Source of the DNA: Pocillopora damicornis
Taxonomy: Eukaryota
DNA length: 64,000 nucleotides
Direction of reading: 5' to 3'
Assembly: GCF_003704095.1 (NCBI RefSeq)
Contig: NW_020846334.1
Location: 186,001 to 250,000, forward strand
The notes beneath the pieces were generated by a model. It was not told the origin of the DNA. It ran no database searches and saw only the letters and a list, made by a program, of their open reading frames with translations. Of the stretch, positions 515-58,189 are shown in pieces (position 1 is the stretch's first letter; every line of letters starts with the position of its first letter). The position numbers were made by a program, and so were the translations under genes.

Positions 515-1433
515 CTTCCGCCGTTAGTGATTTAAGTAGCAAAGCCAAACCTGCAAAAAGAAACCGTGTTATCATTATTCTAGATCGAAGTTGAAACCTC
601 TTCTCATAAAGGTCAAATCAAGATATTTCGCTTGCCAGGGACAAACAGCTTAAATTTTTGCAGCTCTTTGTCTAAAAAATTTTGTATCGATCCCTCTTAT
701 TAATTGCTTGTATAGTACAAAAGGTAACGCAAAGTGTAAATTGTAAATTGTAAAGTGTTACAGTACAGTTGTCCCATCGCTGCGATCTAGTCACGCGAAT
801 CGCGAGGGTTTCTCAAGCTACCCGTTCTCTATCATTTGCCCACAACTTTTGAATGAAATTTAAAATCCAAGATTCCTCTTCAAAGTTTCTTTAAAAAAAG
901 TATATTCCGCTGCGTGCCTTTTAAGCTTTTTCACTGGATAAACATTATTTATAACTGACTTGGAAAAACGAACACATACTGACTGCATCTATTACTTAAA
1001 TACATGAAAAACACTTAGATGTCCTCAGAACAGGAAAGCACATGCTCTGAAGATTTTCTAGATAATGATGCTGCCGAAAAACTGCACCTTTTCCACTGCG
1101 GTATCTCTCTCTCATATGAGTAGATAAACAACTGACGGCAAATGGAACACAAGATCGTGAAACGTCTTGTATCATCGGCTAACATAAAGAATGAATTTGC
1201 TTTGCTCTCGTAAACCAAAGCCAAAATCCTTGAATTGGGTTACAAATCTCCATTCTCCTTCTGAACGGTATTTCATTCAGATGGAACAAACTGTCAAAAG
1301 GCTAAAGGTTCCGTATGTTTTTAAAGAATCATTTGACCTCGCATGCAAGTCAAACTGATCTAAATATTAGTGTTTATCTTGACTGGCTATAGGATTAAAA
1401 TATACAATACTTACCAAGGAATAAAAACATCAT
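515..1433 (-). CDS. Gene A0: 5' end (signal-peptide exons) of a CUB-TM family paralogue continuing beyond the left edge
   Basis: Exons 1433-1415 (ATG ATG TTT TTA TTC CTT G|gtaagt) and 550-515 (cag|GT TTG GCT...GCG GAA G|gtgaaa) splice to MMFLFLGLALLLKSLTAE(G). The 36-nt exon matches exon 2 of genes A and C in size, phase and sequence. Confidence 0.75.
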
Positions 1434-3080
1434 CCCAGCAGCCTAAAACAGCTCGAAGGCGAGCCAATTTCTTACGGAGAAGCGACTGATGTTGTATCTG
1501 AAATCATAGGTAAACAATAGATTTGCGTGGTTTTTACAGAGAGGTCACGTGATATCGAAAGCAGGGTCACGCGATGCAGTGGGTCACGACATTAGAAACA
1601 ACATACGTTAAGTTTGTTTCAGTCGGGAACAGGCAAACTCGAACGATCACCACAAATCGTATGATGAATTTCAATCATATATATTGCTCTTGACAATTGA
1701 GTTTTACCTTGGTCCTAATCGTAATTGTACAGCTTGATTATACTAGCGGGTGAAATTCGAAATAAGGTTGATTCGAACTGAATAGAATCCTGTTCTTTCG
1801 TTACCTTGAAGCCAGAGAAGGTGCTATAAGTTAGCATAATCACATCGATCAAAACTTACTTCTTTCAGTGACGGTTTCTAATTTGCAGACCTATCCGTTT
1901 TCAGCTTAGGTGTATAGTGTAATTTCGTAGTTCAATTTAGCGCACCGGTACTATCTCCCACTGAGAGTCTCCGATGATACCAAAACTGGTTAAAACACAA
2001 CATATATGCGGCTCAAATCATTTCTCGCAATCAAATGCCAATCATAATTAAGGGATATCATTTATAAAAGAAACAAAGTTACTTAGGCTAAGACGATTAA
2101 CTCGCCAACTTAGACGTGTCGCTATCCCAATCATTTATGGATGTCATATATATTGATGTGTGAGCGGACGTTTGTTGCAGTATGTACTACTTTGAGAAAA
2201 AGGACGAGCCTTTCCTTTGTTCTAGCCAGCTTAATGCTGAGCTTAAGTGCTGTATTTTGATGTAAATTGCAACCCGCAATTTATTATGTTCTTTCTACAA
2301 ATTTTGACAAATATATTAAAATAAACTGTCCCTGTGCCTAGTATTACCAAGTCAGGATTCTTTTGACACAGTGCGCATATCGGTTCATACGTAACATCTG
2401 CATCGGTCTGTAAATTTTTTCCAGGCTTTATACTTCTTGCACTAAACATGCCAAAGAAAGAAAATATAGTGGAATCCAATACAGCGTCCACGGCATCGAC
2501 GACACCCGGGAATCAGTAGATGTTGCTAAGATACAGACTGGTATGCTAGATATGACCTCATCAGTAAACAGAAGAATCACATGATTTTCGAAGCGAGGTC
2601 ACGCAATGCAGCCAAAGGGTTAAGACAACTTTCCGATATAAAGTATCTATAGCAACAACCACTCAAAAGGGTAACAAATCAGCGTGACACACGCGATTGA
2701 CACGCGCACACTCTGATATAGCTTCTACGATTATCGTGTGTGCGAGTGGCTACAGCGTCCAGTTTTAATGATTCTGTGTGCAAATTAATATTACCACAAT
2801 AAGTTTGGAGGTTTCTTCTTGCTAAAGTTCAAATAATTTTTAATCAACCACTCACAAAGAGCTATAAATTTTAGATCTGTAGCCACAGTTTGCCCTGCCA
2901 TGTTCCATGTAATACAAGTTTTGTTGCAGAACACCTTATCGCCGACTTTAACGAGTTTAGACAATTTTTTTAATCGAGAACTTGCCTTCATTGTAGGTCT
3001 GTTTGATTTTGTGCTGTTTTCGCAAGCCCTCGCGGTATTTCGAAGTAGATTTTGTTTCCAAAAACTTGCCACGGTTCGAT

Positions 3081-3278
3081 GTACAGTGGATTAAGCAGTC
3101 ACTATGGGGAACGACAGGGTGACCGCTAGTCACAGGTTGACCGCAAAATACAGATTCCACAGAATAGAGGTGAATATTACAGTATTTATATGGAAAAAAT
3201 TTCGTGGCTTTTAAAACCGACCGCTTAATACAGGGTGACCGCTCAATACAGTACCGATTGATACAGGTCCACTATGTA
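3081..3278. mobile_element. MITE-like element with TACAGTGGA-like ends and internal gaccgcttaatacag sub-repeats
   Basis: Left end tacagtgga, right end tccactatgta; repeated gaccgc(t)aatacag units inside. Confidence 0.55.
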
Positions 3279-3666
3279 TAACCTTACGTTTGGTCACAAG
3301 TGATGGAAAATATAATACTTCGACAGAAAAGCGCGCCATTGCGGCACTACAGTGTCACAGTGTCAACGTTATGGAAAAAGTTACTTCTCCCACATCCATT
3401 TACTGAAGATGTAATGAATCTGAGAATAAGATGAGTATTTAGCATTTTTCATTGATGCAAATTAACAGATGAGAGTGCTCTTTGATTGAGTGTCGAAAAC
3501 TAGCCTGTTCAACCTGTTAAGTTAATAAAACGCAGCGAAATAGTAGCTATAGTAGCGAAGGGGTAAAAAAGCAAGAGGTTTGGGTCAGGAAAAGAACGCG
3601 ACCCGACCCAAGCCTCCCTCGTTTTCAACTACCGTGCTTCGTTTTACTGATTGAACGCCTGGAACG

Positions 3667-3872: not shown

Positions 3873-3904
3873 TGGTTCAGGCTGGTCGAAAACTAAAATC
3901 AAAC

Positions 3905-4700: not shown

Positions 4701-7700
4701 TCATGAACTGCCTGTTTGGTTCCTGATACCTTCCCCATCAGTTCCAGCGTTGACTGTGCCTTGCATAGCTAAAACGTTTTCGGGTTGCGATTGGTTATGC
4801 CTCCTATTGCAACAACGGCAAGAACCGGCAACTATAGTACACAGCAAAGACAGTGCTCCAACACAAATCCCGACGATCTTAAGAATTTTAAGGGTTTGAT
4901 CTGACAGGAAATAGGAAAAAGCAGAAAAATGGTTAGCTAGAACAGCAAAGGAGCGTGAAAGCAATTTACGTCACCAAAGCATCCTATGAGCTTTGAAAGG
5001 TTGCACCATAAGTCTGCTTTGTCGATGAACGTAAATTACAGACTTGTTCGCCGTAAGATGGCAAAACGCATTGGCTCATGCAATCATTATTTCACGCAAC
5101 ACGCACAAAACAAGCAAATGCCCGCACAGGCACGTGACAATAAACCACACGCTCCCACGCCAAAAGAAAGCTTCTTCCCAGCGGCACATTACGTAGCACT
5201 AACTGATGCTGATGACACACAACGAGCTAAAAATCGTGATGCACGTGCAAAGCTACCCGTGCACACACATTCAATATCTTTCCTGCCTTTCCTATTGCAA
5301 ATTGATCTCAGGATATTCACCTACCCTTTTTTATTTTGTAGGTGGCTTTGAACCCAGGATATTTCAACTTGCCACTCGATTTAAAAGCCACACGCAAGTT
5401 CCAAGAATCCGAGGTTATCTTCGAGGGTTTCTCTGCTCCACAGTACTTTCCAACAAGGTCGCTGGTGCTGAACATTCCATCTCGCACTTCTACATAATCC
5501 TCAGAACAGTCACTGGTCCGGGACACATTGAAAAACTCAAAAGACAATATAATTTTGGAATTAGTGTCTACACTGATAGACCAGATGCATTCTACAGAGT
5601 CGTCAGACGGCAGAGGGTAGTTGTAACTGGCCAGAGTTCCTGTCTCAGACTTCAATTTGATGTTTAAGTCCTTCGCTGTGCATGAAAACGGAGCTGGTAC
5701 TACAAGAAAACGAGATGAAGACATAGAATTATGTAAATTCGACTTTTTAAAGTGAAAGATGTTTTCAGTAAAAATGCCTTCAGTCAAAAAATAAGTTAAC
5801 ACCTTCAAATCTACAATGCGAAGTTGACAAACAGCTTCAACTGTGGTTGTCGCTAAAAAGAAAAATCAATTGTGTCCAGCCTGCGTTTTTTATAGTTCTT
5901 AGAATTTTAACGTCGTAAGGCAGTGGCCAGATTGTTAACCAAGATTGAGAATGGCGGCAACCACAGTAACAAAACTAAGTAAATTTGAAGACAATTTTCT
6001 CAGCGTAAGTTCGCTGTAAGGAATCTCAAAAAGCTGTTGGGGGGCATGATTTTGCATAAACTTTTCTGTGGGGGAGATAGCAAAATTTTTCCCGGTTTCT
6101 GAAGCGCACGTTACCTTTAGAAACTTGGATTATTCCGTGTACCCTTAAAAGAGTTGAAATCGCGATTCGGATACGTTTTCTTTCGATCTTGGGGATGGAC
6201 AGTGGCTTATTCATTTTCTCTTACCATGGTTACCTCTCATTCAATTACAACAACAATATAAAAAAAAAACTTACATTGGCCGACCATCTCGAAGAAAGCA
6301 TTGAATCCCGTCCCGTACAACAATTCATCTTTGTCAGAATGGAACCGAATCCAGAGATGACGACCGCTGGAGAATACCGATCTTTCAAAGGAGCTCCCGC
6401 AAAAATTCCCAAGTAAGTCATTGGAGGATTTCTGGCCATCTCGAATTTCCAAAGTCGTCTGCTTACAAACATGTGCCAGGAAAAAAGAGGTTATTCTCAA
6501 CCTGACAAAATGGCCCTCGGTAACTGCTATGATCCACGTGCACGTCATGTTGTTAGGAAATGTCTCCGGATACAGCGGGGAAAATAATCTTCCAGTTTTC
6601 CCTTTAAGAGGGATGACGTTATTTATTCCTTGAGTTTTACATGGGCCCATGGCGGCTGAATTGATAAAAGAGAACTTTAATCATTTTGGTTATTTTCTCT
6701 TGATCCTAGAACACAGCGGTCGAACGTCTGCACATGTGCGAACGCAATGACCAGGTCTAACACGAGTAACACCACACACCACTCAAGCCAGTAAGTCACG
6801 GTGTTTTAAGCATACAACGTTTTTGGTAAAGCTCAAAACAGAGTAGTGAATCAACAGGGTATCTTACTTGAATCAGCTTTGTGTTCGAAAAGTCTTGAGT
6901 TTTCCTTTTCTTTACTTTTGCTTCCATTTACAGATTTCTATGAGTTTCAAATTTTATTTCGCTTTTTGCGAGACAGCGGTTCCTTCATATGTTTTCCTTT
7001 GAAATTTTTCGCGGGAAATGGGAGCGCGGGCGGGCAAAATAGATCTCCTTGCGCATGCCCCACGTTTGACCTTTGTGTTTGTTCATAAGCCTTTACATCA
7101 ATCTGCATACGTTTGATTCGCGAGTGACCAAGTTACGATTTGTTTTGGTTTGCATGAAATTTTCAGACCAATCACAAAGTAAAGTAATATTAAAGCAAAG
7201 CTGAATTAATTTGGACGCCTGATCAAAAAGGTACCCTACTTACGATCAGAAACTGCTTTAAAGCTTGCATGGAATCCTGGGTATCTTCCTGAGCTGTCCG
7301 CCACAAAGTCCACTCTGACTACAGAACGGTTGGACTGAATAACTCTGGGTACTGATGCACCGCAAAATCTTCCAAGTAACTCAGTAACTGACCGAACTGA
7401 TTTCCCTTGTTTGATCTCGACGTGGTCTGCAGAACAGCCTGGGGATTCTTGAAGCTCAAACGTATGAAAAGTCAAATTCACGAGAAATCCAACTGGAACT
7501 TGAATAATCCAAGAGCATTTGACATCATTGGAGTAAGAACGAGGGAACTGGTGACTAGCAAACTCACCAAAACTGTCTCCTAATTTGGTTGGAATGCCAT
7601 AAATGTCTAATTTACCACAAGCGTATTTAGCAGGGATTGCCTTAACGGTTTCGTATGTCGCCAAAAACCCTGCGGAAGCTGAGGTATTCAGGAGATTTAC

Positions 7701-10700
7701 ATACGTAACAAGTAGACTGCTTCCTCGCGAGTATACTTCAAAGTCACCAGAAGTTACATCGCAGAATTTTCCGAGGGGGATCCTTGTGGAATTTGTCGTA
7801 TCAAAAATCTCCACATAACTCTTAGTACAACGCGTTGATAACGACAGAAACGTCAGTTTTATTAAATTCCCTTCGGGTACGGATATATTCCAGTTACATC
7901 GGCCTTTTCCAGGATAGAGAGGGAAGCCAGGAGTTGCAAACGTCATTCCCTCTGCCGCCATGTGTACAGTGCTGTTGTNNNNNNNNNNNNNNNNNNNNNN
8001 NNNNNNNNNNNNNNNNNNNNNNNNNNNNNNNNNNNNNNNNNNNNNNNNNNNNNNNNNNNNNNNNNNNNNNNNNNNNNNAGAGCTTTTGTTGTGCTCATTT
8101 GATGAAATCCTTTGCTTCAACACGGTCTAGATGTCGCCGCCGCCCTGGTTTTCCTACAAAGTCAGCGCTTGGGAAGCGTTTTGAGTCACAATAAGTTTCT
8201 TCCTTCACACATTACATATTGCGCGACATTCCAACCTTCGTTCTCACCTGCTGGTATGGTCGTGTAGTTCGCATTGAATCCACCACGTCCGGGGTTAAAG
8301 CCATACGACTGCGGACCTTCAATACCAATCTCGTTTGTCATTGAGTAAAGTAGAAACGATGCTTTTAGTCCACAGAGAAGCGTTTGCGTTGGATTTCTTT
8401 TATTTATCGCAAAGAAAATAGTCAAACATGTTCTAGAAGACGGAAGCCGGAAGGATAGGAAATCCACTCGTACAATATTTCCAACAGGCGCTAGTATTTT
8501 CCAGAAACACTGTTTCATCAATTCCTGCGGGTAGCTGGATGGATACCCAGGGGTTGTTATGACACCCGAAGGACTCTTCCATACAATATTCCTATTTTCA
8601 TCCAAGGAGTTCATCGATGAACAGGCGTGAGCTACAGATATAATGATGGAAAGAATATCATAAAAAATTCGTTTACCTGGGTTGAACTGCCTCTCACGAA
8701 AGCGATGCCTGTTGTGCTGAAGGTTTATGAAAGGGTATGGATAAAAAAAAATTAGAAGGGCTATCTACCTCTTAAAATACGTAAGATAAATAACGTTAGA
8801 TTGAATCGACAAGATACCAGAATGGCTACATAGACCTTTCAAGAGATACGTTTCCTGAGATCAAGTGAGGAAAAAGCCAGAAGACTACCTCACATGAGCC
8901 TACTTTCAATGAGAAATATGAAATAGACTGAAACTGATAATGTCTCATCGCCACCTTGTCAGAGTGTATAGAAAAAAATTATTATGTCACAGGTAAGCGG
9001 CCACATTGCTGAGCAAAATAATAAATGGCGGCGCCCATAGCCCAATTTCTAGTGTCTTTGTAGACTGTTTGGAAAAGGTTAGGCGACATTCTGTAGTTTC
9101 AAAACTCGGTCATTGGCATGATTCTATATCAACTTTTCAATGGTAGCGATAAAAATTATGTGGTTTCTGGAACATCATTCCCCTTAAAGAGAAGACGACC
9201 AGACTGACGCGCACGTTTAACACGTGCGCAGTCAGACATTTTGAAGTAATTTTACGCAAGTAAAAGCAACCATCGCAGTAAGGTCTTTATGAGGGACTAG
9301 TCTCTAAAATTGATATTCTCTTGGTCCTAAACACCTTCCATATACTGGGATAACGCTTTAATGCAACTGTATCGAGGTTACGATCCACAGGATAATTTGG
9401 TTTAATCAACTAAGTTAATAAAGTAGATTAACCACCGCAAAGAGTTTCTAAAGCTGAAGTTTCAAGCGTAAGCCATCTGTCGCTCGAAAAGTCAGCTTCA
9501 GAAACTTTCTACAGTAGGCAATTTACACTATCACCTCAGTTGATACGACCAAATTATCTTATTTTATCCCCCACTGACGCAGCACCAAAGTTTCTTTAAA
9601 AACCTACCCTCTTTACGTTCCATAAGGTTTGCCAGGAGCAGCCCCAACGACCACGCCCTCCCTTTTTATCCACCCATCCCCCATTCAAAGTTCCTCAAAA
9701 ATAAAATTGCCCCGTATACATACCTAAAGAGATGGCAGAATACGATGCATAAAATTCTTCCTCTACGTCAGTCGTTTTAACTTTACTTTCGAACACGATG
9801 TACAAACGGCGAAACTTGGAATATATAGTAGTTGATTCAGAACGTAAGGGTAGACGTGCAGTGAAACGGGCGATGAGGCTGATCACAGAGCCCTCTACAT
9901 CATAAATCTCTACACTGTCCAAGTAGAGTTTGTACGTGAGACGCAGTACCACGGTGTGGTTTTCAGGCGCCGTGATATACCATCCACAAGTTGTATTTAA
10001 GCGATAGCCAAAAGGCAAGGAGGGACTGGAGAAGTTATGTTCCACAGGCGACAGAGGAGCATTCAATGTGGAGTTCAATGTACATACTGGAAAGAATGAT
10101 TATCGTGAACGCTTTAACAATTCCCTGTCAAGAGCTCCCGGGTCCGAGTTTGAGGTTTTCAATACTCCATGTTGCAAAGACGCCTCTTTCTCTAATAAGC
10201 CTCCTTCTCCCTTTCACCAAGGTAAACATTATATTACTGTTCTAAATTTGCTTAAATCTCAGTAAAAAGTATCTAAAAGCCTTAGAAAGTTCTCTATATG
10301 TTTAAATTGTTGTAGGGTTTTCAACCGGAGATACACATATTATTCACAGTATTCATCAATATTACTGGAATTAGCTCGTTGTATCGGTGTTTTAGTTATG
10401 TAGGGGTCTTACATTTCGGGATTATATAAAGGGTGTAGGGTCTAGCAGGAGCACCCACAAGAAAACGTGCCCCAACCCCTCCTTTATACAAACCCACACT
10501 CATCGAGTGTCCTTTAAATCTTAAGTTGCCCCGTATACATACTTGGAGTGACGGCAGAGTACGATGCATAAAATCCTTCATCTGTGTCAATCTTACTTTC
10601 GAACAAGATGTACAAACGGCGGAAATTGGAATATATAGTGGCTTGGTACAAATGTCCTGGCACACGTCCAGTAAAATGGGCGAGGAGGCTGATCACGGAG

Positions 10701-13700
10701 CTCTCCACGTAATAAACCTTTACGCTATCCATGGATAGCTTATATTTGAGATGCAGCACCACGGTGTAGTTCTCAGGCGCCGTGATGTACCATCCACATG
10801 TCGCGTGTAAGCGATAACCAAGAGGCCAGTAGGGGCTAGAAATGTTATGTGCCACAGGCGATAAAGGAGCGTTCAATGTGCTGTTGAATGGACACTCTAT
10901 AGAGGAAGATTATCGTAAAGACTTTGATAACTCCCGGTAAAAGATTCAAGTTTCTAATTAGCAATCCCCGACCAGAGGTTGAACTGAGTTCCCAATAAGC
11001 CCCCCGCCCCACCTCGTCCAAAGCTCAAGTTTCTACCATGCCACCCTTGTTTCTCCCGTCTAGGAAAAACTCTATTATTGTTATACTAGTCTCATTGTAG
11101 AAATTATCTGAAATCCTTATAAGTTTCTCTACGTGTTTTGAAAGTTATGAGTTATTCAGCCAGTGAAATGCACACTATACCCAATATTGATCAATGACTC
11201 ACATTTTGGCTCTCATCAATGACTTTCCAAAAAGCTCTTCTTTCTAACACGCCCTTTTTTCTCCAAAACTCCTCATTCTCTAATAAGCTTCCTCTCTTAA
11301 AAAGCCCCCCCCCCCCNNNNNNNNNNNNNNNNNNNNNNNNNNNNNNNNNNNNNNNNNNNNNNNNNNNNNNNNNNNNNNNNNNNNNNNNNNNNNNNNNNNN
11401 NNNNNNNNNNNNNNNNNNNNNNNNNAAATCCTAAATTGTAAGGTTTATTCAGAACATTATCCGTACTCAGAACCGTGCGAATTGCATGAATCTCGAATGC
11501 AGTTTACCCCCTATATTAAAGTACAAATGGGTTGAAAAGACCTACCTACCGAGCTACAATATTGGAAAGTTCTTTAACTGAAGTCCTTTCAGTTTAAGAA
11601 AAATCAGGTTCCGGGAACTAGGCTCGACAAAATTAGACCGGTTTACTTATCACGACGATTGCATCAACGTTACAACGAATTTGAAATCATTTTCATTTCT
11701 ATAATTACGATCCTTTTACCTTCAAATGGTATGGCCTGGTAAGAGATAAGAAATCCGCCGTAAGAGTCAAGAGGTCCCTTTTTCGCCTCGATCCACACAC
11801 TTCGGCCACTCGACGAGAACTTTTTAGTGCTAAAGGTAACATTCAGGCAGTATTCTGATATTAAGCTGCTTAACTCGCTCGGCCCGTCGTGTATCTTTAG
11901 GTACATATCGCCACATGGCTTATGAAATAAGAAGATTCCCGCGTCAATGCTGAGCACCTTACCAACTGGTGCCGTAATGTTCCATTGGCAAGTAGAGTTA
12001 AACGGAAGCAAAAAAGTACCATTTTCAAGTGAGCGGCTATCTTCTGTGGCCAATAAAGTGACAGTCGAGCTCTGATTGGCAGTACAACCTAAAAAATGGA
12101 ACGTTAAATTCATGGAAATATCATTCCCAGTCTCGAGTAAATAATATTGTTCAGCTCCTTTTCCGCAGTAAGATGTCTTACAGCAAGTACGGTTTGGAGA
12201 AAGATTTCCTTCGTCTTGTCACGAGCGTGGGACAAAGAAAAAAATTCTGAGTCCCCATGGGGAATCGAACCTCAGACCTTCGGAGACTCCACGGTGAGCG
12301 ACTTCTATTACGAAGTTCATATGACACGCGTCCTGCATACTGCTGGGATCAGCAATGTCGATAGCGTCATGTTTGTAGACAGAATAAGAGAGATGGTAAG
12401 TTTTGAGCTCGGTAGAGAAATAGAAAAAGATGCGTGGGACTAGGAAAGAATTCTGAGTCCCCATGACAAATCGAACGGTTTGTTTGCCTTCTCCTCTGCT
12501 GCTTTCAGTCTGGACATGCGCAGAAATCAATCAAAAGCCAGTTGTCAAAATTTAAGAATGCGATTAAGCCGCTGACAAGGAGCCTGTAAGACTCGGGGCT
12601 CGAGATTGCTTCCTCCCTCTCCCAAATTTCCAGACCGATCCATTGCATGTAACGTCCTTCGCGACTGGTTTGCTGCCCAGGGGTCCAACAAAAAGAGGTG
12701 AGACAAACATTCATTCAGAGCATGTCGCTGATCCCATGGAAACCAAATCTCAAACCAAACTGGTAACTACTTCCTCCCTATCCTCCCCCCTCCCCCTTTA
12801 ATATCACCCTGAGTTCGCAGTTCACAGCTGATTACATCATTCAGGTGGCGAAATGTCAGACGGGCCTGTCGAAGTGAATGGCAACGATTGCTCTCGTTTC
12901 ATTGATTCATCTAAACAAGACCCAAGAGTGATTTATTTCAAGATTGTAAATATAACAGATTTTCGCAGCAGTGTCACTAATACTAGTTATTCACTAATTT
13001 CCAGCGTGCTACAACAATAGTTTTTGTTTTGCTGACTCCATATCTTAAAAATACCTTCAGCAGCCAGTGATTTAAGCAGCAACAATAAACCTGATAAAGA
13101 AAATAATGATGATTATTTCAATTATTACGATAAATGTCTCAGATATTATACCATGTATAGATCGAACTATCAAAAACTGGCTAAATCAGAGGAGTGTAAT
13201 CAGGTCAGCATCAATACACCCGCTAAACTGTGCTTGCGAAGACGAAACCATAATATTTCATTAATTGACAACGTACGCCGAGTTACGTTAGTTAAAGTTG
13301 TTTCTTCTACGTGCAAAACTAACCTGAACGCCACGTTTACAGTATTTTTGCACGCAGAAGAAACTCGGATAAAATGTTAGGTTGGTTAGACGGAACTGAA
13401 GAAACAGAAGGTTGGCGAAAATTCACACGGGTTTCAAGGCATCGACTTAAAAAAATTATGCTACGTTTAAGTAACCGTAACTAACTCCTTTGAAGCGTTA
13501 CGTAATAAGACAGCAACGCAAAAAATTCGTCTGTTTGCCACGCTCTTTGGTAAAAAAATAAAATAAAACTATGACTTCAAACACGTTATATCATAGCATT
13601 CAAAGCGAAATACGACTGGGATTGAGATGACCTCAGGTAGCCATTTTGTTGTGGCAATAAATTTTTAAAATATTCGTCAATCCTTTCATTATACATTTGT

Positions 13701-17229: not shown

Positions 17230-17307
17230 ATTTATTAAAGGCAAGAATACATGTAAAATTAAAAAAAATTGGGCATCAGTGTAATCTGTGAAGTTTTTAT
17301 GTGATAA

Positions 17308-44400: not shown

Positions 44401-45971
44401 AGGAGAGATATTCAAGCCTCTAGTTAACCCTAAGAGAGACTTATATCCAAATTCTCCTCACATTATCACCCCTGAATCAAACATGAAAGCCTGGGAATAA
44501 ATGCAATTATTAACAACTAAAGAAGCTGTTGTTGTTACCAAATTCTCCTTGTTAGCACCTCAGGAAATTTATGAAGAACAGTTTGGAGAATATGCATTCT
44601 GATGTTAGGGTGTAAAGGATTAAAGGCGTTTGAATTTTCTGTGAAGAGCAGAGAAAAACTAAAAACTTCAAAATATGAAAAAGGTTTTCAACTCAAAGCC
44701 AGGGTTGTACTTTAACCCTACTGTTTGTTTCTTTGAGGAGAAAATTTTAAATAAAATCGAGAAGTCCATAAAGTCCCTCAGGAGCCATGGAACCTCCGAG
44801 ATAATGTAAAATCGATGATCACTTATACAGTCAGCATTAATATTTACGAATTTCTGGTGATTGCATTGTGCGCACCAATGACTCAATTATTCTTTCAATT
44901 TCGTCATTCGTTTGTTTTGCTTTCTTGTTCTGACTTTTTTAATTGGCTCGTTTGGTTTTTTCTTTCTACTCAGATCAGTGAGAAAGTTACTTTTCGATTC
45001 TAAGAAAGCGATTATTCAACAACCCAGGTTTTCGAGTTATCACCATGCGCACTTATCACTCGGTAACTTGTGCAGCGTTAATGTGCGCATATGATGAATC
45101 AAATATGTTAATTTTTACACCACACGAACATATTTTATGCAGAGACAAATCACCTGGCACTTAAATATAAAGCGCTGTTCGACTAGGTGTCACAAAAAAA
45201 AAGTACCAATGGGAACGTTAAGTGAAAACAACCAAATTGCCTAAAGCGCTGAGAAACGCGGGCGACCAAGTCGTGATTGGTCTAAAATTTGTATCTGATT
45301 GGTCGAGAAAGTGGCGCGAGTTTTCTGGACAAATCACAGTGCGAAGTAATGCAAACCAAAACAATACCTGATTACTTTCGACGTTCAATTGAAAATTATT
45401 CTATTTAGAAGTACCTTCATCAATAACTCTGTAAGATCCACTGAATCCATCAAAGGGATCTTTTTCATTGGAAACGAAGAAAAAGTAGAGTGAATTTTCC
45501 GAAGAAATAATTGGAGCTGGCTTGTTTGATCCACAGAACTTGCCGATCAACGGACTCTCCCCGCTTGATCCGTCTCTGACAGCAATGTAATCACTCCCAC
45601 ATTGCGGAAATGCACCCTCTAATTGAAAGGAATCGAAGGACAACTCAATCCTATAGCCCTCTGGGGCCTTAAACAGGTAGGTGCAGTTGAGATTCACAAT
45701 GTATCGGCTCGGATAAGAGGGGCTTTGGAAGATCATTGATGAGCCATTTGCGTTGAATGTGATATTGCTCTTAAAACGGCTGCAACTCTTTCGTTGTGCT
45801 AGAGATGGAAAACGGAAATGAATTATCAGATACTCAAGGTGCTGTACATAATTGATAAGAAACGGCTTTGAAAAAGACAACTTTATGGTAGTTCATAAAC
45901 CTGCACTTACCTGAAGAACTTGTTGTTTGCAAGATTACAATGAAAGCTGTGTGAAAAAATAATAAACACAT
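41418..45971 (-). CDS. Gene D: secreted or GPI-anchored protein with 3 CUB domains
   Basis: Exons: 45971-45911 (signal MCLLFFHTAFIVILQTTSSS), 45798-45415, 44398-44045, 42933-42562 (each one CUB, phase 1). Tentative last exon 41545-41418 encodes a hydrophobic C-terminus; its acceptor is weak and uncertain. Confidence 0.75.
41988..42482 (+). mobile_element. SINE interrupted by a TTAA MITE (42094-42305)
   Basis: The SINE body ...ggcaagacact...gtgcctctccccacccggatgta resumes after the MITE as cgggta...aaccttgcgttagacaaggatcccatccaggggg; TTAA is present on both sides of the MITE. Confidence 0.65.
43318..43411 (+). mobile_element. Penelope-type pLTR fragment with hammerhead-like core (CTGATGA...GAAAC)
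   Basis: CTGATGA at 43322-43328 and GAAAC at 43349-43353; homologous to 32981-33092. Confidence 0.6.
43816..43992 (+). mobile_element. Penelope-like pLTR remnant (short inverted piece + direct copy)
   Basis: tgacgaaaggctaacgctcgaaatgtcagc, preceded by its imperfect reverse complement; the 3' part matches 19280-19390 and 9500-9616. Confidence 0.65.
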
Positions 45972-48918: not shown

Positions 48919-51900
48919 TTACTCCGCAACAGGCGTGAGATTTTCCCGCGAAAAAGTGCCGTGTGACTGCGATTGTTTCCTCTCATTTCTGTCACACGAC
49001 GTCCATTGCGATGTGAGCAATTCCTGCTCTGATAATGACTCCTTACGTGTGTCTGAATTCTCCATTACAGGAGAGAACTGAAGGTCTATGTGTTCCCCGG
49101 ATGAGGAAGCCGTGCCACCTGTGCAGTTCTGCTCGTTTTCTTGGTTTTCACAACCAGGTGTCAAAGTATTTTCTTCGTCCGAATTTCTTTGTTTTCGTTT
49201 AAGGTAAAGAGTTAATATTAACAAAATCATCATCAAACCAAGCATAGTTGACACACCTGTGATGACCAGTATCAAAGGAGGAGAGTCTGAGTTAGAAAAA
49301 CAAACAGAAATAAATCAGTAAATTCGAAATGTTTCCTCGTTGTAAAACTTTGACTTAGCGAGTCGTCTGGCCTCTTCGACTACAAATCATGCAAATAGTG
49401 ACAAAAGGCTCTGAAATCAATATTATGGGGGTATTAGGGACTTAATCAAAGCACGAAGCAGCATTAACAATAAGATTCAAAGGTGAATTATACTCCAGAA
49501 ACCATACAAATCTCTCCGTGTGACGTCAAAGGTAAGTGGCCAGGCTGCGAAGCAGGATCTCAAAATGGCGACTTTCATAGTCGAATTTTTAGCACATTTA
49601 AAAACGATTTCCAGGAGGTTTAGTTTATCATTGGAAAACGAAAACACCTTTAGTGACATAATTTTCAGGATATTTTTGTTATGTCTCACTATATATGCAC
49701 AGTTCCATAGGCGCGTTGGGCACCTTTTGCCGGGCGCACGACTCCGTAATGAAATTTAACTTGTTGTGTTACTGGGCTGGAATCTTCAGTTTTCGATCAC
49801 TCGAAACGCCAGTGCATTACAAATTTGTCATGACGAAGATGAAATTTTTATGGTTTCTTGTTTTTACTCCTTCAATGCGCAGAACAATATCCCAGCGCGT
49901 ACGACAGTCGAGAGCCCGACAGCAGTGTAATAATAGTCCATTTTACTGCGTGCTTGGTTGCCAAGCCTTTGAACAGGAGTGAGGTTAAGGGTGACCTTGT
50001 TATGATACAAACCTTGCTGCTTTTCAGATGTAAATTACTTTGTTATCATGCTTATTAGATACTGATCTCTATCACGACATGGTCACCTTTAGCCTCACTC
50101 CAAATCAAAGGCTTGGCAATTAAGTACACAATTGTAAAATGGCTTATTCCTTTGATGGTTATTCAACGCAGCTTTCGTTTGTAATGCTGTAATGCTGAAG
50201 GGAGCACAAGCAAAGCTCTTATAACAACATCCGGAGAGGTGGAGGTCCACCTTTGAAGTATCCATAATTGAAACAGCGCTTTCATTTCCCAAAGACATTT
50301 ATGACGTCTTTAACTATAACACACTTTTGAAACTAAAACTGTGGTCTGAAATAAGTTACCCTTTGCGTCAGGAATGGGAATTTATTCCCATCTCTTCTGG
50401 AACAACACCTTTTGTATAAACTAGACTTACCTTTAACAGCTATATATTTCGCTTTGAACCTCACAGATCTGTACGGGTTTGCCTTAAATCTCACCCACAT
50501 TTCGTTGCTAGTGGTAGAGATCTTCTCAGGTGTTGCGTGGCCACAGAACAAACCGAGCCGCTTACTGTCACGGTGGACTCCGTCACGCACCTCTAAATAA
50601 GGAACCTCCTGATTGGATAAACACGGAGGGGAATCTCCCAGATCAAAGAACTCAAATTCGAGATTGATAGAGTGTCTCTTCTTGACGGAAATGTACCAAG
50701 TGCATTGGATGTCATCCATGAAGGATTCAGGATATCCTGGGCTCGAAAGCTCACCTCTCTGTTCACTGATCTCAGTTCTATCATTCTCGTCCGTTGTGCG
50801 GTTCGGCGAGCAGCCTTCAGTACTCTTCTTCACTGAAAATATGAGAGAAATTTGTTGAGAAAAAGAGTCCTAGTAAGATTACGAACTTGGAACCAGAGAC
50901 CATGAGCTCAGTTCACTAACTCTTGCTTGGAAATTACATCATGAAAAAGAAATCGATGGTATTCTAATTTTTGTAAATGTTAGTTTGAGTGTATTTCTAT
51001 AGATAAAGTGGTTACATTTTGATCTGAACGATAAAAGAGGTCGTCATTCCCCAGTTCAATGTTTTGAAAAAACTTACACCACAAAATGAGGATTCCTCAG
51101 GAAAATTATGGCAAAAGCAAAACAATTTTTCACTATTCCAAACTTTCATTCAGAATAACAAAGTTCTCTTATCTTTTTTTCTTTTTTTCACCAGATCCAA
51201 GAGAAGTTAATCTTCAATGCTTAAAGTTAAAGAGTATTATGCAATCTGTTGTTTGAAGAACTTCAGATTCAGACAAGTAGTAAAATCTAAGGTTTGTTGG
51301 AAGAGGGGGGGGGGGAATCTGAACTCCCCGGTCCCTCCTTTATTCCCCAGCGATGTCAGCGAGTAATTTGGTAATCAAAGGCCCCGTTTCTCAAAAGCGC
51401 TGGTAGTTACAGGTTTACCCCCCCCCCCCCCCCGAAAAAAAAGGACAAAAACAACAACAACAACGTTGTAGTATTCTTTACTTTAAGATCCCAAGATTTG
51501 GTTCAGATCCGTAGACCTACCGACCAGACCATTCTCGTTTTAAGAAATACCATGTCCTGTGTGATCGGGAAAATAGAGAGACAATTTCTGGGTTTGGATC
51601 CCTACCCCTCCACCCCTTGGACTTAAGCCAACGCGTAACCTGAAGCCTGCCTGGAGATTTTGATGGATCATTGATTAATAACAGTGCCACTTAGCACACG
51701 TCCACGATTTAATTAATAGCATCATCAAGTTTGCTTCTCAATAATGAGATAACCACTCCATTTAATTCATTATTGAGTCAAAAATTTCATCAGGATTAGA
51801 ATAAAACATTTAACGACTTAACTTTGAGATGAATATGATGATAAATAGCTCAATGATTCCTGTTGACACCACCTAACGTTTAGGCGCCAAAAAGGCCAAA

Positions 51901-53109
51901 ATTTGACTGGAACAAAGAGCAATTTGGATTCTACTTACACGACGAATGTCATCAAAACAGTACGATTTCAACTGGTCAACCTGTTTTATTGTTTTAAAAC
52001 GAGTTAGATTGAAAAACATATGAAAATAATTTGCAGCTTGGATCGGCCAATGCGACAGAATAATATTTCTGTCCGTTCACCGGCGCTAGATCAAGTTTTT
52101 TTGTAGACACGGCAGAGTGATTCCTATTAAAGTTTATTTGGCTTATTTTAACAAAAGGTTAGAGATATTAACGTCAGTTTAAAACATTTCTTTGACTTTT
52201 TGACGTAAATTTAATAAACCATGAGTCAAGTCTGACAGAATTTAAAGTGAGTGGAGTCTCGATTGTCTTTAGATTATTACAGAGGAATGACTACATTTAA
52301 CCTTTAAAAGTGCCTTACAAACCTCAAACATCCACGAAGAAAGGGTGAATATTATCGATATTTTTTGATACTGTTCATGGCATAGCGGAAACATTCCCCA
52401 AAGTAAAAAAAAATGTTTTAACCAGTGACTTTCAGTGTACTTCATTCTTGCCAATTTTATTTTGTTGAGAGGCTGTATTTGTTTATACGTTCGGCGATCG
52501 CACGCAAGTGAGCCACTTTGGGGGAAATGAGCTAATAATCTGCGTTGTTTCCTGTCTCGAATCCCTTTGAAACATTTGTAGACCACAAATTATCACATAA
52601 GCTATGAACGACTAGGAGGATTCTACTCGTTCAATCACGAGGCGAGTTACATAATATCACAAATGCCCCAGCCGAACTCGAGAAAATGCTCGCCTTGGTT
52701 TGACTGAGAAGTGACACTTGAGTTCGGTTTAAAAAGGAAGCTGACAACACACTGGTTTCTCTGTTCTGTCTTCATATTCAAAGACAGCCGGGCATTGAAA
52801 CGAAATTAGTGCGCCGTTGTGTCTAAATCCTTTGTTTGCCCACGAAAATACCAAGAACATTAGCTTAACTAGGCAGCACAAAGTGTGCGGTTACTCGCAA
52901 CAATGAAACGGGTCTCGGTTGAGCGACAAAGAATGGCTTCTAACCGGTCTCAGCAGATTAGAAATTATGTCAGACTGAAGGAACTTTTATACTCTGAGAA
53001 CGGTGCAAGTTTAAGTCACGTCACACTCAAAACGAAGTAAAATTCTCAACAGCTTGAAGTACTTACGTAAAACGATCGCCAGGAGAACAAGAGAGAAAGA
53101 AGAATCCAT
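48919..53109 (-). CDS. Gene E: single-CUB type I membrane protein, 270 aa
   Basis: Exons: 53109-53067, 50832-50431 (CUB), 49286-48919 (TM LILVITGVSTMLGLMMILLILTLYL, then KRKQR and an acidic tail). Spliced N-terminus MDSSFSLVLLAIVLLKKSTEG|C. Total 813 nt in frame. Confidence 0.85.
49936..50145. mobile_element. Palindromic MITE-like element
   Basis: ccattttactgcgtgcttggttgccaagcctttga pairs with tcaaaggcttggcaattaagtacacaattgtaaaatgg. Confidence 0.65.
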
Positions 53110-55194: not shown

Positions 55195-58189
55195 TTAATT
55201 CTTGTCCAGTGCCATCCTCTTTGATTTTCTCGCCTTTTTCCGCTCACTATTTTCCTGCATTCTACACGTTTGTTCCTCGCAGGCGCTCACGTTTTCCCGC
55301 CTTATTCTCTTGTCACCAGTGTCCCATCCGCGTTTCATCCAGGACGGGAATTTCCGCGTTTCCTTGGGAAGAACTAAATTACTATCTGTAACTGTGTCAT
55401 TATGTAACGATGCTTTACTCCGATTTTCTATTGGTGTAGCAGGAGAAACCTTGATTGTTATTCCCGGCCTGGTTTTATAGACTTTGACGCGGGTTGATGA
55501 AAGAGAGTTTCTCCTTTTTATTGCCGAAGCCACAACACCAACTATAATTAAAATGAAAACTACGACGGCCAATGCCACAAGAAAAGAAACAGCTGATAGA
55601 CCTGGAGCAAAGATAAAAAATGAAACATTCACATCAGGCCATGCTTAGAAGACCCTTTTAGATATTCTTAAAGGTGAAGTACACCTTAGAGCATTACTTT
55701 TAAGGGCCGATCTTTATTTATCGCCTGAGAAGGGTCTCAGGATTTTGGTTGTGTCACCATTGAATGCGGAAAAGGCAAAAGCGCAAACGCGGTTCTGGGT
55801 CGTATTGATTTTTTTGTAGGCTACGTACGATTTTCTTAAACGCGAACCTGTGTCTAATGCTTTCTAGCAAACTTAGAGGTAAAAAATGGTGGAAAGTTAT
55901 ATGACTGCTCCACCGAAAAAATCCGCTTCGACCAAGGCTTGTTAGGTCATAACCGCCTGCCGCCTGCCCGCCGTCTCAGGTGGGATATGATTGAGTGAAC
56001 TAACTTACCATTCGAAGTATCATATGTGGTATATGACATCTTAAAGCCTCGCTTCTCCACAGACCCGTCTGAACGAAAGTGAATCCACATGTGATTTCCG
56101 GTTGAGAGGACGTCATTAGGTATTCTGCTACCACAAAACGTTCCAATAACTGGACTATTTGAGTATTTCCCGTCCCGAACCGACACAAAATCGCAATCTT
56201 GGCAAGCAGGACTGGCGTTTTGAAGATCAAATGTTAGAAAAGAAAGCTTTATCCTCTTCTCTTGAAGAGAAATAACCCATGTACAGGTTAGATTTCCGGG
56301 ATAGGCTTCAGAAGTGTCGTAATCAGGGCTACAAAATGTGTCAGATGATTTAGTCAAAAATATGTTATTGTTCAGATTTGAAGTTTTGTTTCTGGAGCAT
56401 CTTGTTTCTGTAAGAAGAGGATAAAACTATTCATTGTTTGGATCTGTTAGTATTTGAGCAACTTCCCACCCACCCCTCCCCTAATCCAGCATTAACTCTA
56501 ACTTGTTATCATTTGACCATTCTTGGGTTGAGGGAGGGGTGGGTGCGCATTCCATTAATTTCGGACCGTAGTACATTTACGTAGACAGTTCATGTAGATA
56601 AGATGACAGAGGCCTTGAGGGACCGGTACCATCAGGTATTTGACTTGTTTGTTTGCATTTGTTCGTTGTTTAGACCTCGAAAACTATCCTCCAGTTAAAC
56701 AAAGCACAAAAAAACATAAACACGAGAACAATGAAAATGTTTAAGAAGTAATGATTTATGACCCGTTTAGTTTTCAATAAGTCGTTGCAAAGTGTTAACA
56801 TCCTCTATATGATAAGCTGAATTATACACGTATTTTGACTGGTTCTTGTTTTTGATCCATTGCATAGAGGATAGACGCAAGGATAACGTTACTATTAATT
56901 TTTTTTCCCACCAATTCTTCGTTATCACATAAAACAAATTGAATCCAAGTTTCCGTGGGTCTGTACAGTAATAAATCACAGACGACTAATAAATGTGGTA
57001 AGGATCTGTTTTGTTCCTGCCTTATTTTGATGTCATATGTGATCAATTACTGAACAGACCCAAGGCAGCATAAAATCTATTTGGTATTAAAGTATTTAAC
57101 AAATAATTATTTTCAACTCACCGCTTAAAACAAAGATGCGTAGCAGGTTAAAGAAATCTGTGAAAAAAGTTTTATATCAAAATGACTCATAAAATCTACC
57201 AGTTTATAAATTTAGTGATTGAAAGCATATGAAGTGAGTCGAAGAAATAGGATGGAGCGAGGCGCTCATATTCTCATAAATCTATCAAGATGCTAACGCA
57301 CTGGTAGCCAACAGAAAATGTTCCTTTTTGTGTGTGTTTTACAGTCGGTATGAATTTAGTGCAAAGCAAGCGCAAAGGATGGATGTACGAATGAGGGACG
57401 CACACAAGTTTTCAAGCTTCTCTTCTCGCTTTTGACCCACGCTTCGTGCACGTCTCGCTCTTTTTTCCGCTCGCCTGGGAAACGATGTACTGGAGATAAA
57501 TGTGTGGTGGCCTTCCGAGACTCGGTGAATCAATAATTGATTACCAAAGTACTCGCGAAATGATTGTTATAACAGTTTTAACGACCTCCTCCAATTTTTT
57601 TTTTTTTACCGATTTTAATTGAAAGAAAATCAACTTGGTCCATCATTAGTAGCTTTGCGTTATAAATTAAGGGATGTAGTTTTTAATTAAAAGACTGATC
57701 ACTGAGTTCTTAACACTGATTTTGTGTACGTACCGAATTGAAATTTAAACGGAGGAGTACATCCGGTCATGCATTGAAATGCTGTGCGGATGTCACGGTA
57801 CTTTTTTCACAGGATTAGAAGCTATTACCGTTATTCCTCACAATCCTGGTCACGATCGTATGGAACCCCGGTTTTACAGCTAACAGGAATTAAGCCTGTT
57901 TCTTACTTTGTAACACACTCGAGCTGATTGAAGTTTAACAACTTAAAGCCGAGAGCAAGTGGCGAATGTTTCCAGGAAAATATCATTTTGTGGAAAGGTA
58001 GTCATATAATTGGCGGCCAGAGAGTGAAAGTCCGCACGAGAACTGATTAGTTTGAAATGTTGAATTATCATCACTGATGATTTCACAATCGAGGTCCACA
58101 AAATGCCAAAAGGACTGAATATACAAAGACACAATATTATACTCACGAACAAGCCTGAGAAGAAATGATCTTTCTAACCAGGTCGCCAT
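55195..58189 (-). CDS. Gene F: single-CUB type I membrane protein with basic cytoplasmic tail
   Basis: Exons 56407-56009 (CUB) and 55601-55195 (TM AVSFLVALAVVVFILIIVGVVASAI, then KRR) are firm. Probable first exon 58189-58147 (43 nt, phase 1, same size as exon 1 of gene E). Extra small exons near 57733-57879 are possible. Confidence 0.75.
56440..56550. repeat. Short hairpin repeat family; second copy at 61845-61950
   Basis: Both copies read ggatc...gagcaac...cccctcccctaa...gggtt(g/a)ggg(g/a)..gggt.ggtg. Confidence 0.55.

What the first reader, a model, noticed from the sequence alone, without database searches (positions are those of the whole stretch)
515..58189. Cluster of seven CUB-only cell-surface genes: candidate diversified recognition/adhesion receptor locus
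Seen: four paralogues sharing a split signal peptide (A0, A, B, C), three of them visible as 8, 5 and 7 CUBs + TM + tail of about 30-40 aa, plus a 3-CUB gene and two single-CUB TM genes within 58 kb. No astacin, serine-protease, EGF, LDLa, Sushi or FA58C exon was found. Established: BMP1/tolloid, cubilin, neuropilin, NETO and CSMD all combine CUB with other domains, and CUB domains mediate protein recognition. Inference: a lineage-expanded family of CUB-only receptors (immune or symbiont recognition, allorecognition, gamete recognition or skeletal-matrix adhesion) that automated pipelines would mislabel 'cubilin-like' or 'tolloid-like'.
Basis: partly seen in the sequence, partly recalled or inferred. 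Interest (0 to 1): 0.8.

Follow-up and report, generated by a model that had tools for sequence, protein, structure and literature searches.

The report
Conserved coral cluster of CUB-only genes
A 65-kb stretch of a stony-coral (probably Pocillopora) genome holds seven neighbouring genes whose proteins consist only of CUB binding domains, most anchored in the cell membrane. The genes are real and conserved among corals, but they evolve like ordinary co-receptor or binding proteins, not like a hypervariable recognition locus.

Summary
Pfam and a local profile find 25 CUB domains in the window and 8 more just to its left. They fall into seven genes:
- A0: 8 CUBs
- A: 8 CUBs
- B: 5 CUBs
- C: 7 CUBs
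- D: 3 CUBs
- E and F: one CUB each

Every CUB exon is phase 1-1 with AG/GT borders. A0, A, B and C share a 36-39-nt signal-peptide micro-exon, one exon that carries two CUBs, and a last exon coding a membrane span plus a 31-38-aa tail. No exon for any other domain was found.

- CUB-only membrane proteins are already known (SOL-1/dSol-1, CDCP1).
- The family is not a recent lineage-specific expansion. Subfamilies A/A0, B and C each have counterparts in other coral assemblies.
- A related species keeps the same gene order, including an orphan GPCR head-to-head with gene A.
- Orthologue dN/dS is 0.03-0.43. A ~97%-identical Tara Pacific scaffold gives pN/pS of 0.25. Neither suggests hypervariability.
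- D has no membrane exon and is probably secreted.
- The tails of C and B end in class I PDZ-ligand motifs, and C's is conserved in its orthologue.

My best reading is non-catalytic surface binding or co-receptor proteins.

No RNA evidence could be obtained. The five assembly gaps lie in introns, except one that removes the 5' end of A's two-CUB exon.

The parts
1415..1433 (-). Gene A0, exon 1: ATG plus 6 codons plus 1 base, donor TTG|GTAAGT
   Evidence: It is homologous to A's exon 1. The rest of A0 (8 CUBs plus the TM exon) lies left of the window in L002.
515..550 (-). Gene A0, 36-nt signal-peptide micro-exon, phase 1-1
14191..14206 (-). Gene A, exon 1: ATG plus 5 codons plus 1 base
13055..13090 (-). 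Gene A, signal micro-exon
11720..12088 (-). Gene A, CUB type a exon
   Evidence: Pfam E 8e-6. Splice sites.
10543..10896 (-). Gene A, CUB type b exon
9724..10086 (-). Gene A, CUB type b' exon, a tandem duplicate of b (70% aa identity)
8248..8631 (-). Gene A, CUB type c exon
7244..7978 (-). Gene A, two-CUB exon (d+e). Its 5' end is lost in the assembly gap 7979-8078.
   Evidence: The gap was not filled.
6275..6655 (-). Gene A, CUB type f exon
   Evidence: Pfam E 1.6e-22. Splice sites.
5325..5699 (-). Gene A, CUB type g exon
   Evidence: Pfam E 7e-29. Splice sites.
4704..4900 (-). Gene A, last exon: short stalk, TM span, Cys cluster and a 38-aa tail
   Evidence: Acceptor at 4900, with 17 of 20 pyrimidines upstream.
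16225..17226 (+). Intronless orphan class A GPCR, head-to-head with gene A
   Evidence: Pfam 7tm_1, E 7e-30. Orthologues of 70-83% identity sit on contigs of the same length as those carrying the CUB exons.
18473..18488 (+). Gene B, candidate exon 1 (inferred only)
19879..19917 (+). Gene B, 39-nt variant of the signal micro-exon
20495..20875 (+). Gene B, CUB type c exon. The poly-Leu upstream of it is an intronic TTA repeat.
21781..22530 (+). Gene B, two-CUB exon (d+e)
   Evidence: Pfam E 6e-39. Splice sites.
23497..23889 (+). Gene B, CUB type f exon
24638..25024 (+). Gene B, CUB type g exon
25177..25349 (+). Gene B, last exon: TM span plus a 31-aa tail ending T-E-L
   Evidence: The acceptor lies 11 nt past the gap 25067-25166.
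26485..26500 (+). Gene C, candidate exon 1 (inferred only)
28790..28825 (+). Gene C, signal micro-exon
31305..32066 (+). Conserved intronless ORF of 254 aa nested in C's long intron. Not part of the CUB family.
34079..34444 (+). Gene C, CUB type a exon
35373..35723 (+). Gene C, CUB type b exon
36203..36580 (+). Gene C, CUB type c exon
37433..38170 (+). Gene C, two-CUB exon (d+e)
   Evidence: Pfam E 2e-42. Closest solved structure is cubilin 3kq4, E 3e-52.
38326..38697 (+). Gene C, CUB type f exon
38857..39228 (+). Gene C, CUB type g exon
   Evidence: Pfam E 1e-31. Splice sites.
39627..39811 (+). Gene C, last exon: TM span, Cys cluster and a 35-aa tail ending S-K-V
   Evidence: 82% nt identity to the orthologue, whose tail ends T-K-V.
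45911..45971 (-). Gene D, signal-peptide exon: 20 aa, donor CAG|GTAAGT
45415..45798 (-). Gene D, CUB 1 exon
   Evidence: Pfam E 5e-26. Splice sites.
44045..44398 (-). Gene D, CUB 2 exon
42562..42933 (-). Gene D, CUB 3 exon. No TM exon follows it.
   Evidence: The only hydrophobic ORF downstream (42232-42305) belongs to a genome-wide repeat.
53067..53109 (-). Gene E, candidate first exon (inferred only)
50431..50832 (-). Gene E, CUB exon
   Evidence: Pfam E 2.5e-24. Splice sites.
48922..49286 (-). Gene E, TM exon with a longer tail. Its 3' limit is untested.
56009..56407 (-). Gene F, CUB exon
   Evidence: Pfam E 1e-26. Splice sites.
55198..55601 (-). Gene F, TM exon with a longer tail. The first exon of F was not found.

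Best explanation
This is a conserved tandem cluster in a scleractinian coral, probably Pocillopora damicornis. Its genes encode non-catalytic glycoproteins built only from CUB domains.

Four paralogues (A0, A, B, C) are type I membrane proteins with a shared plan:
- a signal peptide split over a tiny first exon and a 36-39-nt micro-exon;
- a rod of 5-8 CUBs in a fixed order, a-b-c-[d-e]-f-g, with local duplications or losses;
- a last CUB that abuts the membrane, with almost no stalk;
- one TM span followed by a cysteine cluster (candidate palmitoylation sites);
- a 31-38-aa tail with no enzymatic or known signalling domain.

The tails of C and B end in class I PDZ-ligand motifs. D is a secreted 3-CUB protein. 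E and F are single-CUB membrane proteins.

Shown: the domain content, exon structure, paralogy, orthology, synteny and purifying selection.

Inferred: they work as cell-surface binding or co-receptor (auxiliary-subunit) proteins. The CUB array would bind protein partners, and signalling or localisation would depend on associated proteins, such as PDZ scaffolds or a partner receptor or channel. This is how the CUB membrane proteins neuropilin, NETO, SOL-1 and LEV-10 work. Most of the CUBs lack the canonical Ca2+ triad, so binding probably does not use the cubilin/C1s-type Ca2+-lysine site, except perhaps at the 'e' position.
For: - 33 CUB domains and nothing else.
- Phase 1-1 exons with AG/GT borders.
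- Shared micro-exon and homologous exon 1.
- TM-plus-tail exons.
- Position-by-position paralogy of the CUBs.
- A 7-CUB one-to-one orthologue of C, and two A-like 7-CUB genes, in another species with the same gene order.
- Clades A/A0, B and C are each supported at 99% SH-aLRT and contain proteins from other assemblies.
- dN/dS is 0.03-0.43 in every domain, and pN/pS is 0.25 against a near relative.
- Tail ends are S-K-V in C, T-K-V in the C orthologue, T-E-L in B, and T-N-L and T-S-F in the two A-like genes of the related species.
- The Ca2+ triad is complete only in B's e-type CUB.
- Known CUB membrane proteins act as auxiliary subunits or co-receptors, and NETO1 has a class I PDZ motif (PMC9083331).
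Against:
- The first exons of B, C, E and F are unproven.
- A and A0 of this genome lack the PDZ-type ending.
- No binding partner is known.
- The closest solved structure by sequence is cubilin, an endocytic multi-ligand receptor, so a scavenger role is equally compatible with the sequence.
- Full-length annotated relatives could not be retrieved. The word search is limited by length, and the profile search was swamped by cubilin-like giants.
Confidence: 0.55

Rival explanations
1. Endocytic or scavenger multi-ligand receptors. The CUB arrays would capture soluble ligands (nutrients, lipoprotein-like cargo, microbial or symbiont surface molecules) for uptake, as cubilin does.
For: - Cubilin CUB5-8 is the best solved-structure match by sequence.
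- Arrays of 5-8 CUBs form a multi-site binding surface.
- The e-type CUBs keep a near-canonical Q/E-D-D site.
Against: - 32 of the 33 CUBs lack a complete Ca2+ triad, which cubilin uses for ligand binding.
- The short tails show no obvious NPxY- or YxxPhi-type endocytic motif (read by eye only).
- Cubilin itself has EGF repeats and no TM span.
Confidence: 0.15
2. One reading: a diversified recognition locus for allorecognition, gamete recognition or symbiont recognition, whose distal domains evolve fast to discriminate partners.
For: - The N-terminal 'a' CUB is the fastest-evolving domain: 55-61% identity between orthologues and dN/dS 0.33-0.43, against 0.10-0.15 for the e and g CUBs.
- Copy number and CUB number differ between species and paralogues. 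A has b/b'. A0 has f-g-f'-g' and lacks a. The related species has two or three A-like copies.
- One domain (A0 f) shows 7 nonsynonymous against 1 synonymous difference to a near relative.
Against: - Every domain has dN/dS below 0.5.
- One-to-one orthology and gene order are kept across a divergence of dS about 0.8.
- A0 differs by 14 of 882 aligned codons (98.4% amino-acid identity) from a ~97% nt-identical Tara scaffold, with pN/pS 0.25.
- Exon divergence there is no higher than intron divergence.
Confidence: 0.1
3. Skeletal-matrix or extracellular-matrix adhesion proteins of calicoblastic cells. Their ectodomains would be shed into the skeleton, as reported for other membrane-anchored coral skeletal proteins.
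For: - CUB-only proteins with signal peptides occur in Acropora skeletal proteomes (PMC4890752).
- Tandem acidic CUB proteins occur in the Porites skeleton (PMC8691061).
- The host is a calcifying coral.
Against: - The described skeletal CUB proteins have a single CUB plus threonine-rich or acidic regions and no TM span. No such regions are seen here.
- No identity to those proteins was tested or shown.
- Some contigs with family members carry ammonium-transporter copies only 71-75% identical, about as distant as Nematostella's 74%. This hints at a distribution beyond close calcifying relatives, but the taxa are unnamed.
Confidence: 0.08
4. Mis-parsed genes or pseudogenes. The CUB exons would belong to larger multi-domain genes, or would be decaying copies.
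For: - There is no transcript evidence.
- One exon border is lost in a gap.
- The first exons of four genes are unproven.
Against: - All 33 CUB ORFs are open, with phase-compatible splice sites.
- Each of A0, A, B and C has its own signal micro-exon and its own stop-terminated TM exon.
- Purifying selection acts on orthologues.
- No other domain exon lies in the 64 kb.
Confidence: 0.04

Closest known systems
SOL-1 (C. elegans) and dSol-1 (Drosophila)
   Same: They are type I membrane proteins whose ectodomain is CUB domains only (four), followed by a TM span. They are non-catalytic and act through partner proteins (PMC9083331).
   Different: They have 4 CUBs, against 5-8 here. Orthology was not tested, because no SOL-1 sequence was at hand. 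Nothing links the coral genes to glutamate receptors. The split signal peptide, the two-CUB exon and the clustered arrangement are features of the coral family.
NETO1/2, SOL-2, LEV-10 and neuropilins
   Same: They are single-pass CUB co-receptors or auxiliary subunits with short tails. NETO1 ends in a class I PDZ ligand, as C and B do here. NETO2 and the neuropilin CUBs match the e-type CUB at E about 1e-17.
   Different: All of them carry LDLa, or FA58C plus MAM, besides CUB. None of these was found here.
Cubilin
   Same: It is the best match among solved structures (3kq4, E 2.7e-52 over four stretches) and has long arrays of CUB domains.
   Different: From my own knowledge, cubilin has EGF repeats, 27 CUBs and no TM span. 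Here 32 of the 33 CUBs lack a complete Ca2+ triad, and a TM span is present.
CDCP1
   Same: From my own knowledge, it is a CUB-like-only type I membrane glycoprotein.
   Different: The CDCP1-specific Pfam models hit only weakly and partially. One hit (A's f-type CUB, 29.5 bits against a cutoff of 27) passes, and it is far weaker than the generic CUB hit of 80 bits. From my own knowledge, CDCP1 has a long tyrosine-phosphorylated tail, whereas these tails are 31-38 aa.
Acropora skeletal 'CUB domain-containing proteins'
   Same: They are coral proteins with a signal peptide and CUB as the only known domain, and they show lineage-specific duplication (PMC4890752).
   Different: They have a single CUB plus a threonine-rich region, and no TM span is reported. 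The relation to genes D, E and F was not tested.

Membership tests
CUB domain superfamily (PF00431) | Match to the CUB profile above the gathering score | tested here: met
   All 25 window domains score 24-144 bits against a cutoff of 21.4. The conserved Cys-x-Trp is present in 32 of 33 domains.
CUB domain superfamily (PF00431) | Canonical Ca2+-binding triad (Glu, Asp, Asp) of ligand-binding CUBs | tested here: not met
   In an alignment anchored on the cubilin-aligned e-type CUB, the triad is complete only in B's e-type CUB. It reads Q-D-D in the other e-type CUBs and in F, and is absent elsewhere.
Cubilin | EGF repeats, about 27 CUBs, and no transmembrane span | tested here: not met
   No EGF pattern in any frame. 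The genes have 5-8 CUBs and a TM exon.
NETO / SOL-2 / LEV-10 | LDLa module next to the CUBs | tested here: not met
   No LDLa pattern and no Pfam hit in the non-CUB ORFs.
Neuropilin | Two CUBs, two FA58C domains, one MAM domain and a TM span | tested here: not met
   No FA58C or MAM hit among the 81 ORFs.
Tolloid/BMP1 and MASP/C1r/C1s | Astacin or trypsin catalytic domain | tested here: not met
   No HExxHxxGxxH, TAAHC or GDSGGP motif in six frames, and no Pfam hit.
CDCP1 | Matches to the CDCP1-specific CUB models (PF23665, PF23668) across the ectodomain | tested here: not met
   All hits are partial and sit under a stronger generic CUB hit. Only one passes the 27-bit cutoff.
SOL-1 / dSol-1 | CUB-only ectodomain plus a single TM span | tested here: met
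   The architecture definition comes from PMC9083331.
SOL-1 / dSol-1 | Sequence orthology to SOL-1 and four CUBs | not tested
   No SOL-1 sequence was available through the tools. The CUB number differs (5-8).
SOL-1 / dSol-1 | Modulation of an ionotropic glutamate receptor | not testable with these tools
   This needs electrophysiology or co-expression.

The most novel reading that the evidence does not exclude
The CUB-array membrane proteins are partner or auxiliary subunits of the orphan class A GPCR that sits head-to-head with gene A. The two starts are about 2 kb apart. The same arrangement is seen directly in one related species, and by shared contig length in at least four further assemblies. 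Together they would form a two-component receptor: CUB ectodomain in trans plus 7TM. This would parallel adhesion GPCRs such as ADGRG6, which carry a CUB in cis, and it would be used by corals for sensing an external or symbiont-derived ligand.
Probability: 0.07. Interest if true: 0.7.

Novelty: new member of a known kind. Interest (0 to 1): 0.35.

Why it matters
Corals have many uncharacterised surface proteins, and annotation pipelines tend to label any multi-CUB gene 'cubilin-like' or 'tolloid-like'. This locus defines a distinct, conserved family: CUB-only, single-pass, with a short tail. It has clear subfamilies, a recognisable exon signature, and a conserved GPCR neighbour.

That gives a concrete set of candidates for co-receptor or ligand-capture functions in coral cell biology. 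It also removes them from the list of likely hypervariable self/non-self loci. The value is mainly in annotation and in generating hypotheses; no new principle is shown.

Tried and rejected
2. Full-length relatives.
   - The word search sees only proteins 0.55-1.75 times the query length, so it returned single-exon ORFs.
   - The profile search of 1.84 billion representatives was ranked by summed score and swamped by cubilin-like proteins of 2000-4000 aa. None of the 150 listed was a close full-length family member.
   - Spliced models were not joined and sent to any search tool. All searches were exon by exon, by reference.
3. ATG at 20434 followed by poly-Leu as B's start. Rejected, because the Leu run is an intronic TTA microsatellite just upstream of a standard acceptor, and a homologous micro-exon lies 580 nt upstream.
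4. Hydrophobic ORF 42232-42483 as a TM or GPI exon of D. Rejected, because its hydrophobic end belongs to a repeat with thousands of candidate copies in the genome.
5. An 'a'-type CUB for A0 across the window border. None was found.
6. Signal exons conserved between species upstream of C. No convincing match was found.
7. First exon of F. Not found.
8. Logan or ENA ORFs longer than the two-CUB exon as possible cDNA evidence. All hold only two CUBs, so they are genomic read-through.
9. ESM Atlas search for the nested ORF. No usable hit.
10. Earlier scan notes. Nothing bears on this locus beyond the same finding.

Full report
**Source.** The window is G000:C2969:186001-250000 of a 234.35-Mb assembly in 4393 contigs. 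Its GC content is 39.7% and it has five 100-109-nt gaps.
- The best named relative of the neighbouring ammonium-transporter exon is Stylophora pistillata, at 83% identity.
- Two Tara Pacific coral-metagenome scaffolds are 96-99.6% identical in DNA to the left part of the locus.
- The published Pocillopora damicornis assembly is 234 Mb (PMC6208414; PMC9646523).
- The host is therefore a pocilloporid stony coral, probably P. damicornis. This identification is an inference.

**Observation.**
- Pfam finds CUB in every candidate exon.
- A profile built from those hits finds 25 CUB domains in the window and no others. It finds 8 more in the 10 kb to the left, and none in the 10 kb beyond that.
- Every CUB lies in its own exon with AG/GT borders and phase 1-1, so any exon can follow any other in frame. 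The exception is one exon in each large gene that carries two CUBs.
- Seven genes result:

| Gene | Strand | CUBs | Note |
|---|---|---|---|
| A0 | minus | 8 | body lies left of the window |
| A | minus | 8 | |
| B | plus | 5 | |
| C | plus | 7 | |
| D | minus | 3 | |
| E | minus | 1 | |
| F | minus | 1 | |

- An intronless class A GPCR sits between A and B. An ammonium-transporter gene lies to the right of F.

**Gene anatomy.** Pairwise identities show that the CUBs of the four large genes correspond position by position:

| Gene | CUB order |
|---|---|
| C | a-b-c-[d-e]-f-g |
| A | a-b-b'-c-[d-e]-f-g |
| A0 | b-c-[d-e]-f-g-f'-g' (no 'a' exon) |
| B | c-[d-e]-f-g |

- Identity between paralogues is 33-70%, lowest in the membrane-distal domains.
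- Each of the four genes ends in an exon that begins a few residues before a TM span. The last CUB therefore sits almost on the membrane.
- That exon continues with a cysteine cluster and a tail of 38 (A), 31 (B) or 35 (C) residues before a stop.
- Each gene also has a micro-exon coding the hydrophobic core and the ...K-x-L-x-x-E end of a signal peptide. It is 36 nt in A0, A and C and 39 nt in B. A degenerate pattern gives 3 matches against 0 expected, and B's copy is.
- In A and A0 the micro-exon is preceded by a homologous first exon: ATG, 5-6 hydrophobic codons and one base. Similar candidates exist for B and C but are unproven.
- D has a 20-residue signal exon with a perfect donor and no TM exon. 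The only hydrophobic ORF downstream is part of a dispersed repeat.
- E and F have TM exons with longer tails. Their first exons are unresolved.

**Gaps.**
- The gap at 7979-8078 swallows the acceptor and about 7-10 codons of A's two-CUB exon. The frame across it cannot be known and I did not fill it.
- The other four gaps lie in introns or upstream sequence. B's TM-exon acceptor lies 11 nt beyond the gap at 25067-25166.
- Gap-free orthologous loci have no additional CUB exon at the equivalent positions.

**CUB-only?**
- Regular-expression scans of all six frames find no EGF, LDLa, Sushi, astacin or trypsin signature.
- None of the 81 same-strand ORFs of 55 aa or more outside the known exons hits any Pfam family.
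- Within the window the claim holds, but transcripts are still needed.

**Relatives.**
- The two-CUB exon has four copies in this genome, all in this cluster. Other CUB exons elsewhere in the genome are 40% identical or less.
- Sixty-two exon-sized ORFs from other assemblies match it at 44-74% identity. The only named one is from the coral Desmophyllum pertusum.
- A quick maximum-likelihood tree places A/A0, B and C in separate clades, each with 99% SH-aLRT support and each containing sequences from other assemblies. It also shows two further clades.
- On one 400-kb contig of a related species, the C orthologue has the same seven CUBs in the same order, at 55-85% amino-acid identity.
- That contig also carries two A-like seven-CUB genes plus a fragment of a third. 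A 7tm_1 gene lies head-to-head with the nearer one, as in the window.
- Contigs of identical length carry the GPCR orthologue (70-83% identity) and family CUB exons in at least five assemblies, and the ammonium transporter in several. Treating equal length as the same contig is an inference.

**Selection.**

| Comparison | Result |
|---|---|
| C and A against their orthologues | dS about 0.65-1.2 (one saturated value of 3.0) |
| Domain 'a' (most distal) | dN/dS 0.33-0.43 |
| Membrane-proximal e, f and g | dN/dS 0.03-0.30 (e and g 0.10-0.15) |
| A0 against the ~97%-identical Tara scaffold | 14 nonsynonymous and 16 synonymous differences over eight CUBs, pN/pS 0.25 |
| A0 domain f alone | 7 nonsynonymous against 1 synonymous |

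- These are functional genes under constraint, with a gradient of faster change towards the tip.
- This is not the pattern of a hypervariable recognition locus, although site-level tests were not possible.
- Copy number and CUB number do change between lineages (b/b', f'-g', loss of a and b in B, extra A-like copies).

**Mechanism.**
- By sequence, the closest solved structures are cubilin CUB5-8, PCPE-1, the MASPs, NETO2 and the neuropilins.
- In an alignment anchored on the cubilin match, the Glu-Asp-Asp Ca2+ triad is complete in only one of the 33 CUBs. It reads Gln-Asp-Asp in the other e-type CUBs and in F.
- Types b and c have also lost the second disulfide.
- The tails have no recognisable domain.
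- C ends S-K-V and its orthologue ends T-K-V, within a well-conserved tail. B ends T-E-L. The two A-like genes of the related species end T-N-L and T-S-F. A and A0 of this genome do not end this way.
- A short tail with a PDZ ligand on a non-catalytic CUB ectodomain is how NETO1 is built, and (from my own knowledge) neuropilin too. SOL-1 and dSol-1 show that a CUB-only ectodomain on a single TM span can act as an auxiliary subunit (PMC9083331).
- I therefore favour a binding or co-receptor role (confidence 0.55). Cubilin-like ligand capture is the main rival. Recognition and skeletal-matrix roles are less likely.

**Comparison and novelty.**
- Membership in cubilin, NETO/LEV-10, neuropilin, tolloid/MASP and CDCP1 fails on defining features that were tested here.
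- The architecture matches SOL-1 in kind, but orthology was not tested.
- The family seems uncharacterised. The Pocillopora genome paper and the coral skeletal-proteome papers describe other CUB proteins, not these.
- I class it as a new member of a known kind: multi-CUB single-pass membrane proteins.
- Its most unusual feature is the conserved head-to-head GPCR neighbour, which I give as the speculative novel case.

Noticed in passing
window 16225-17226 (+): An intronless orphan class A GPCR lies head-to-head with CUB gene A, with the two starts about 2 kb apart. It belongs to a sharply bounded orthogroup: identities run from 99% down to 46%, then drop to 33%. The nearest named proteins are 27-30% identical Porites 'unnamed' or TAAR9-like receptors. 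It is syntenic with the CUB cluster in other assemblies.
   Followed up: partly
window 31305-32066 (+); L003:2577-3359: A conserved intronless ORF of about 254 aa is nested in the long second intron of gene C. It is open on the same strand in a related species, at 70% nt identity over 1.1 kb. It is rich in Ser and Lys, and the N-terminal part looks like a coiled coil by eye. It has no Pfam hit and no usable ESM Atlas hit.
   Followed up: partly
window 60138-60989 and 62142-62756 (+): Two exons of an ammonium transporter (Amt family, 'ammonium transporter 3'-like; 83% identical to Stylophora pistillata) lie next to the cluster. The gene sits on contigs of the same length as those carrying CUB family members in several other assemblies.
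   Followed up: partly
window 42232-42305: This is the end of a short dispersed repeat with thousands of candidate copies in the genome, 91-99% identical over about 74 nt. It creates a misleading hydrophobic ORF downstream of gene D.
   Followed up: yes
window 36765-36920; L003:9044-9600: A tandem-repeat tract in the intron after C's third CUB exon is also present and expanded at the same intron position in the related species.
   Followed up: no
window 20437-20466: A (TTA)n microsatellite just upstream of B's first CUB exon reads as Met plus poly-Leu in frame with the exon. It could be mistaken for a signal peptide by gene finders.
   Followed up: yes
L002:6053-6391 versus L006:5065-5403: The first f-type CUB of A0 shows 7 nonsynonymous against 1 synonymous difference to a ~97%-identical Tara scaffold. 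The other seven CUBs show 0-3 nonsynonymous differences each. This may be gene conversion with f', local positive selection or chance.
   Followed up: no
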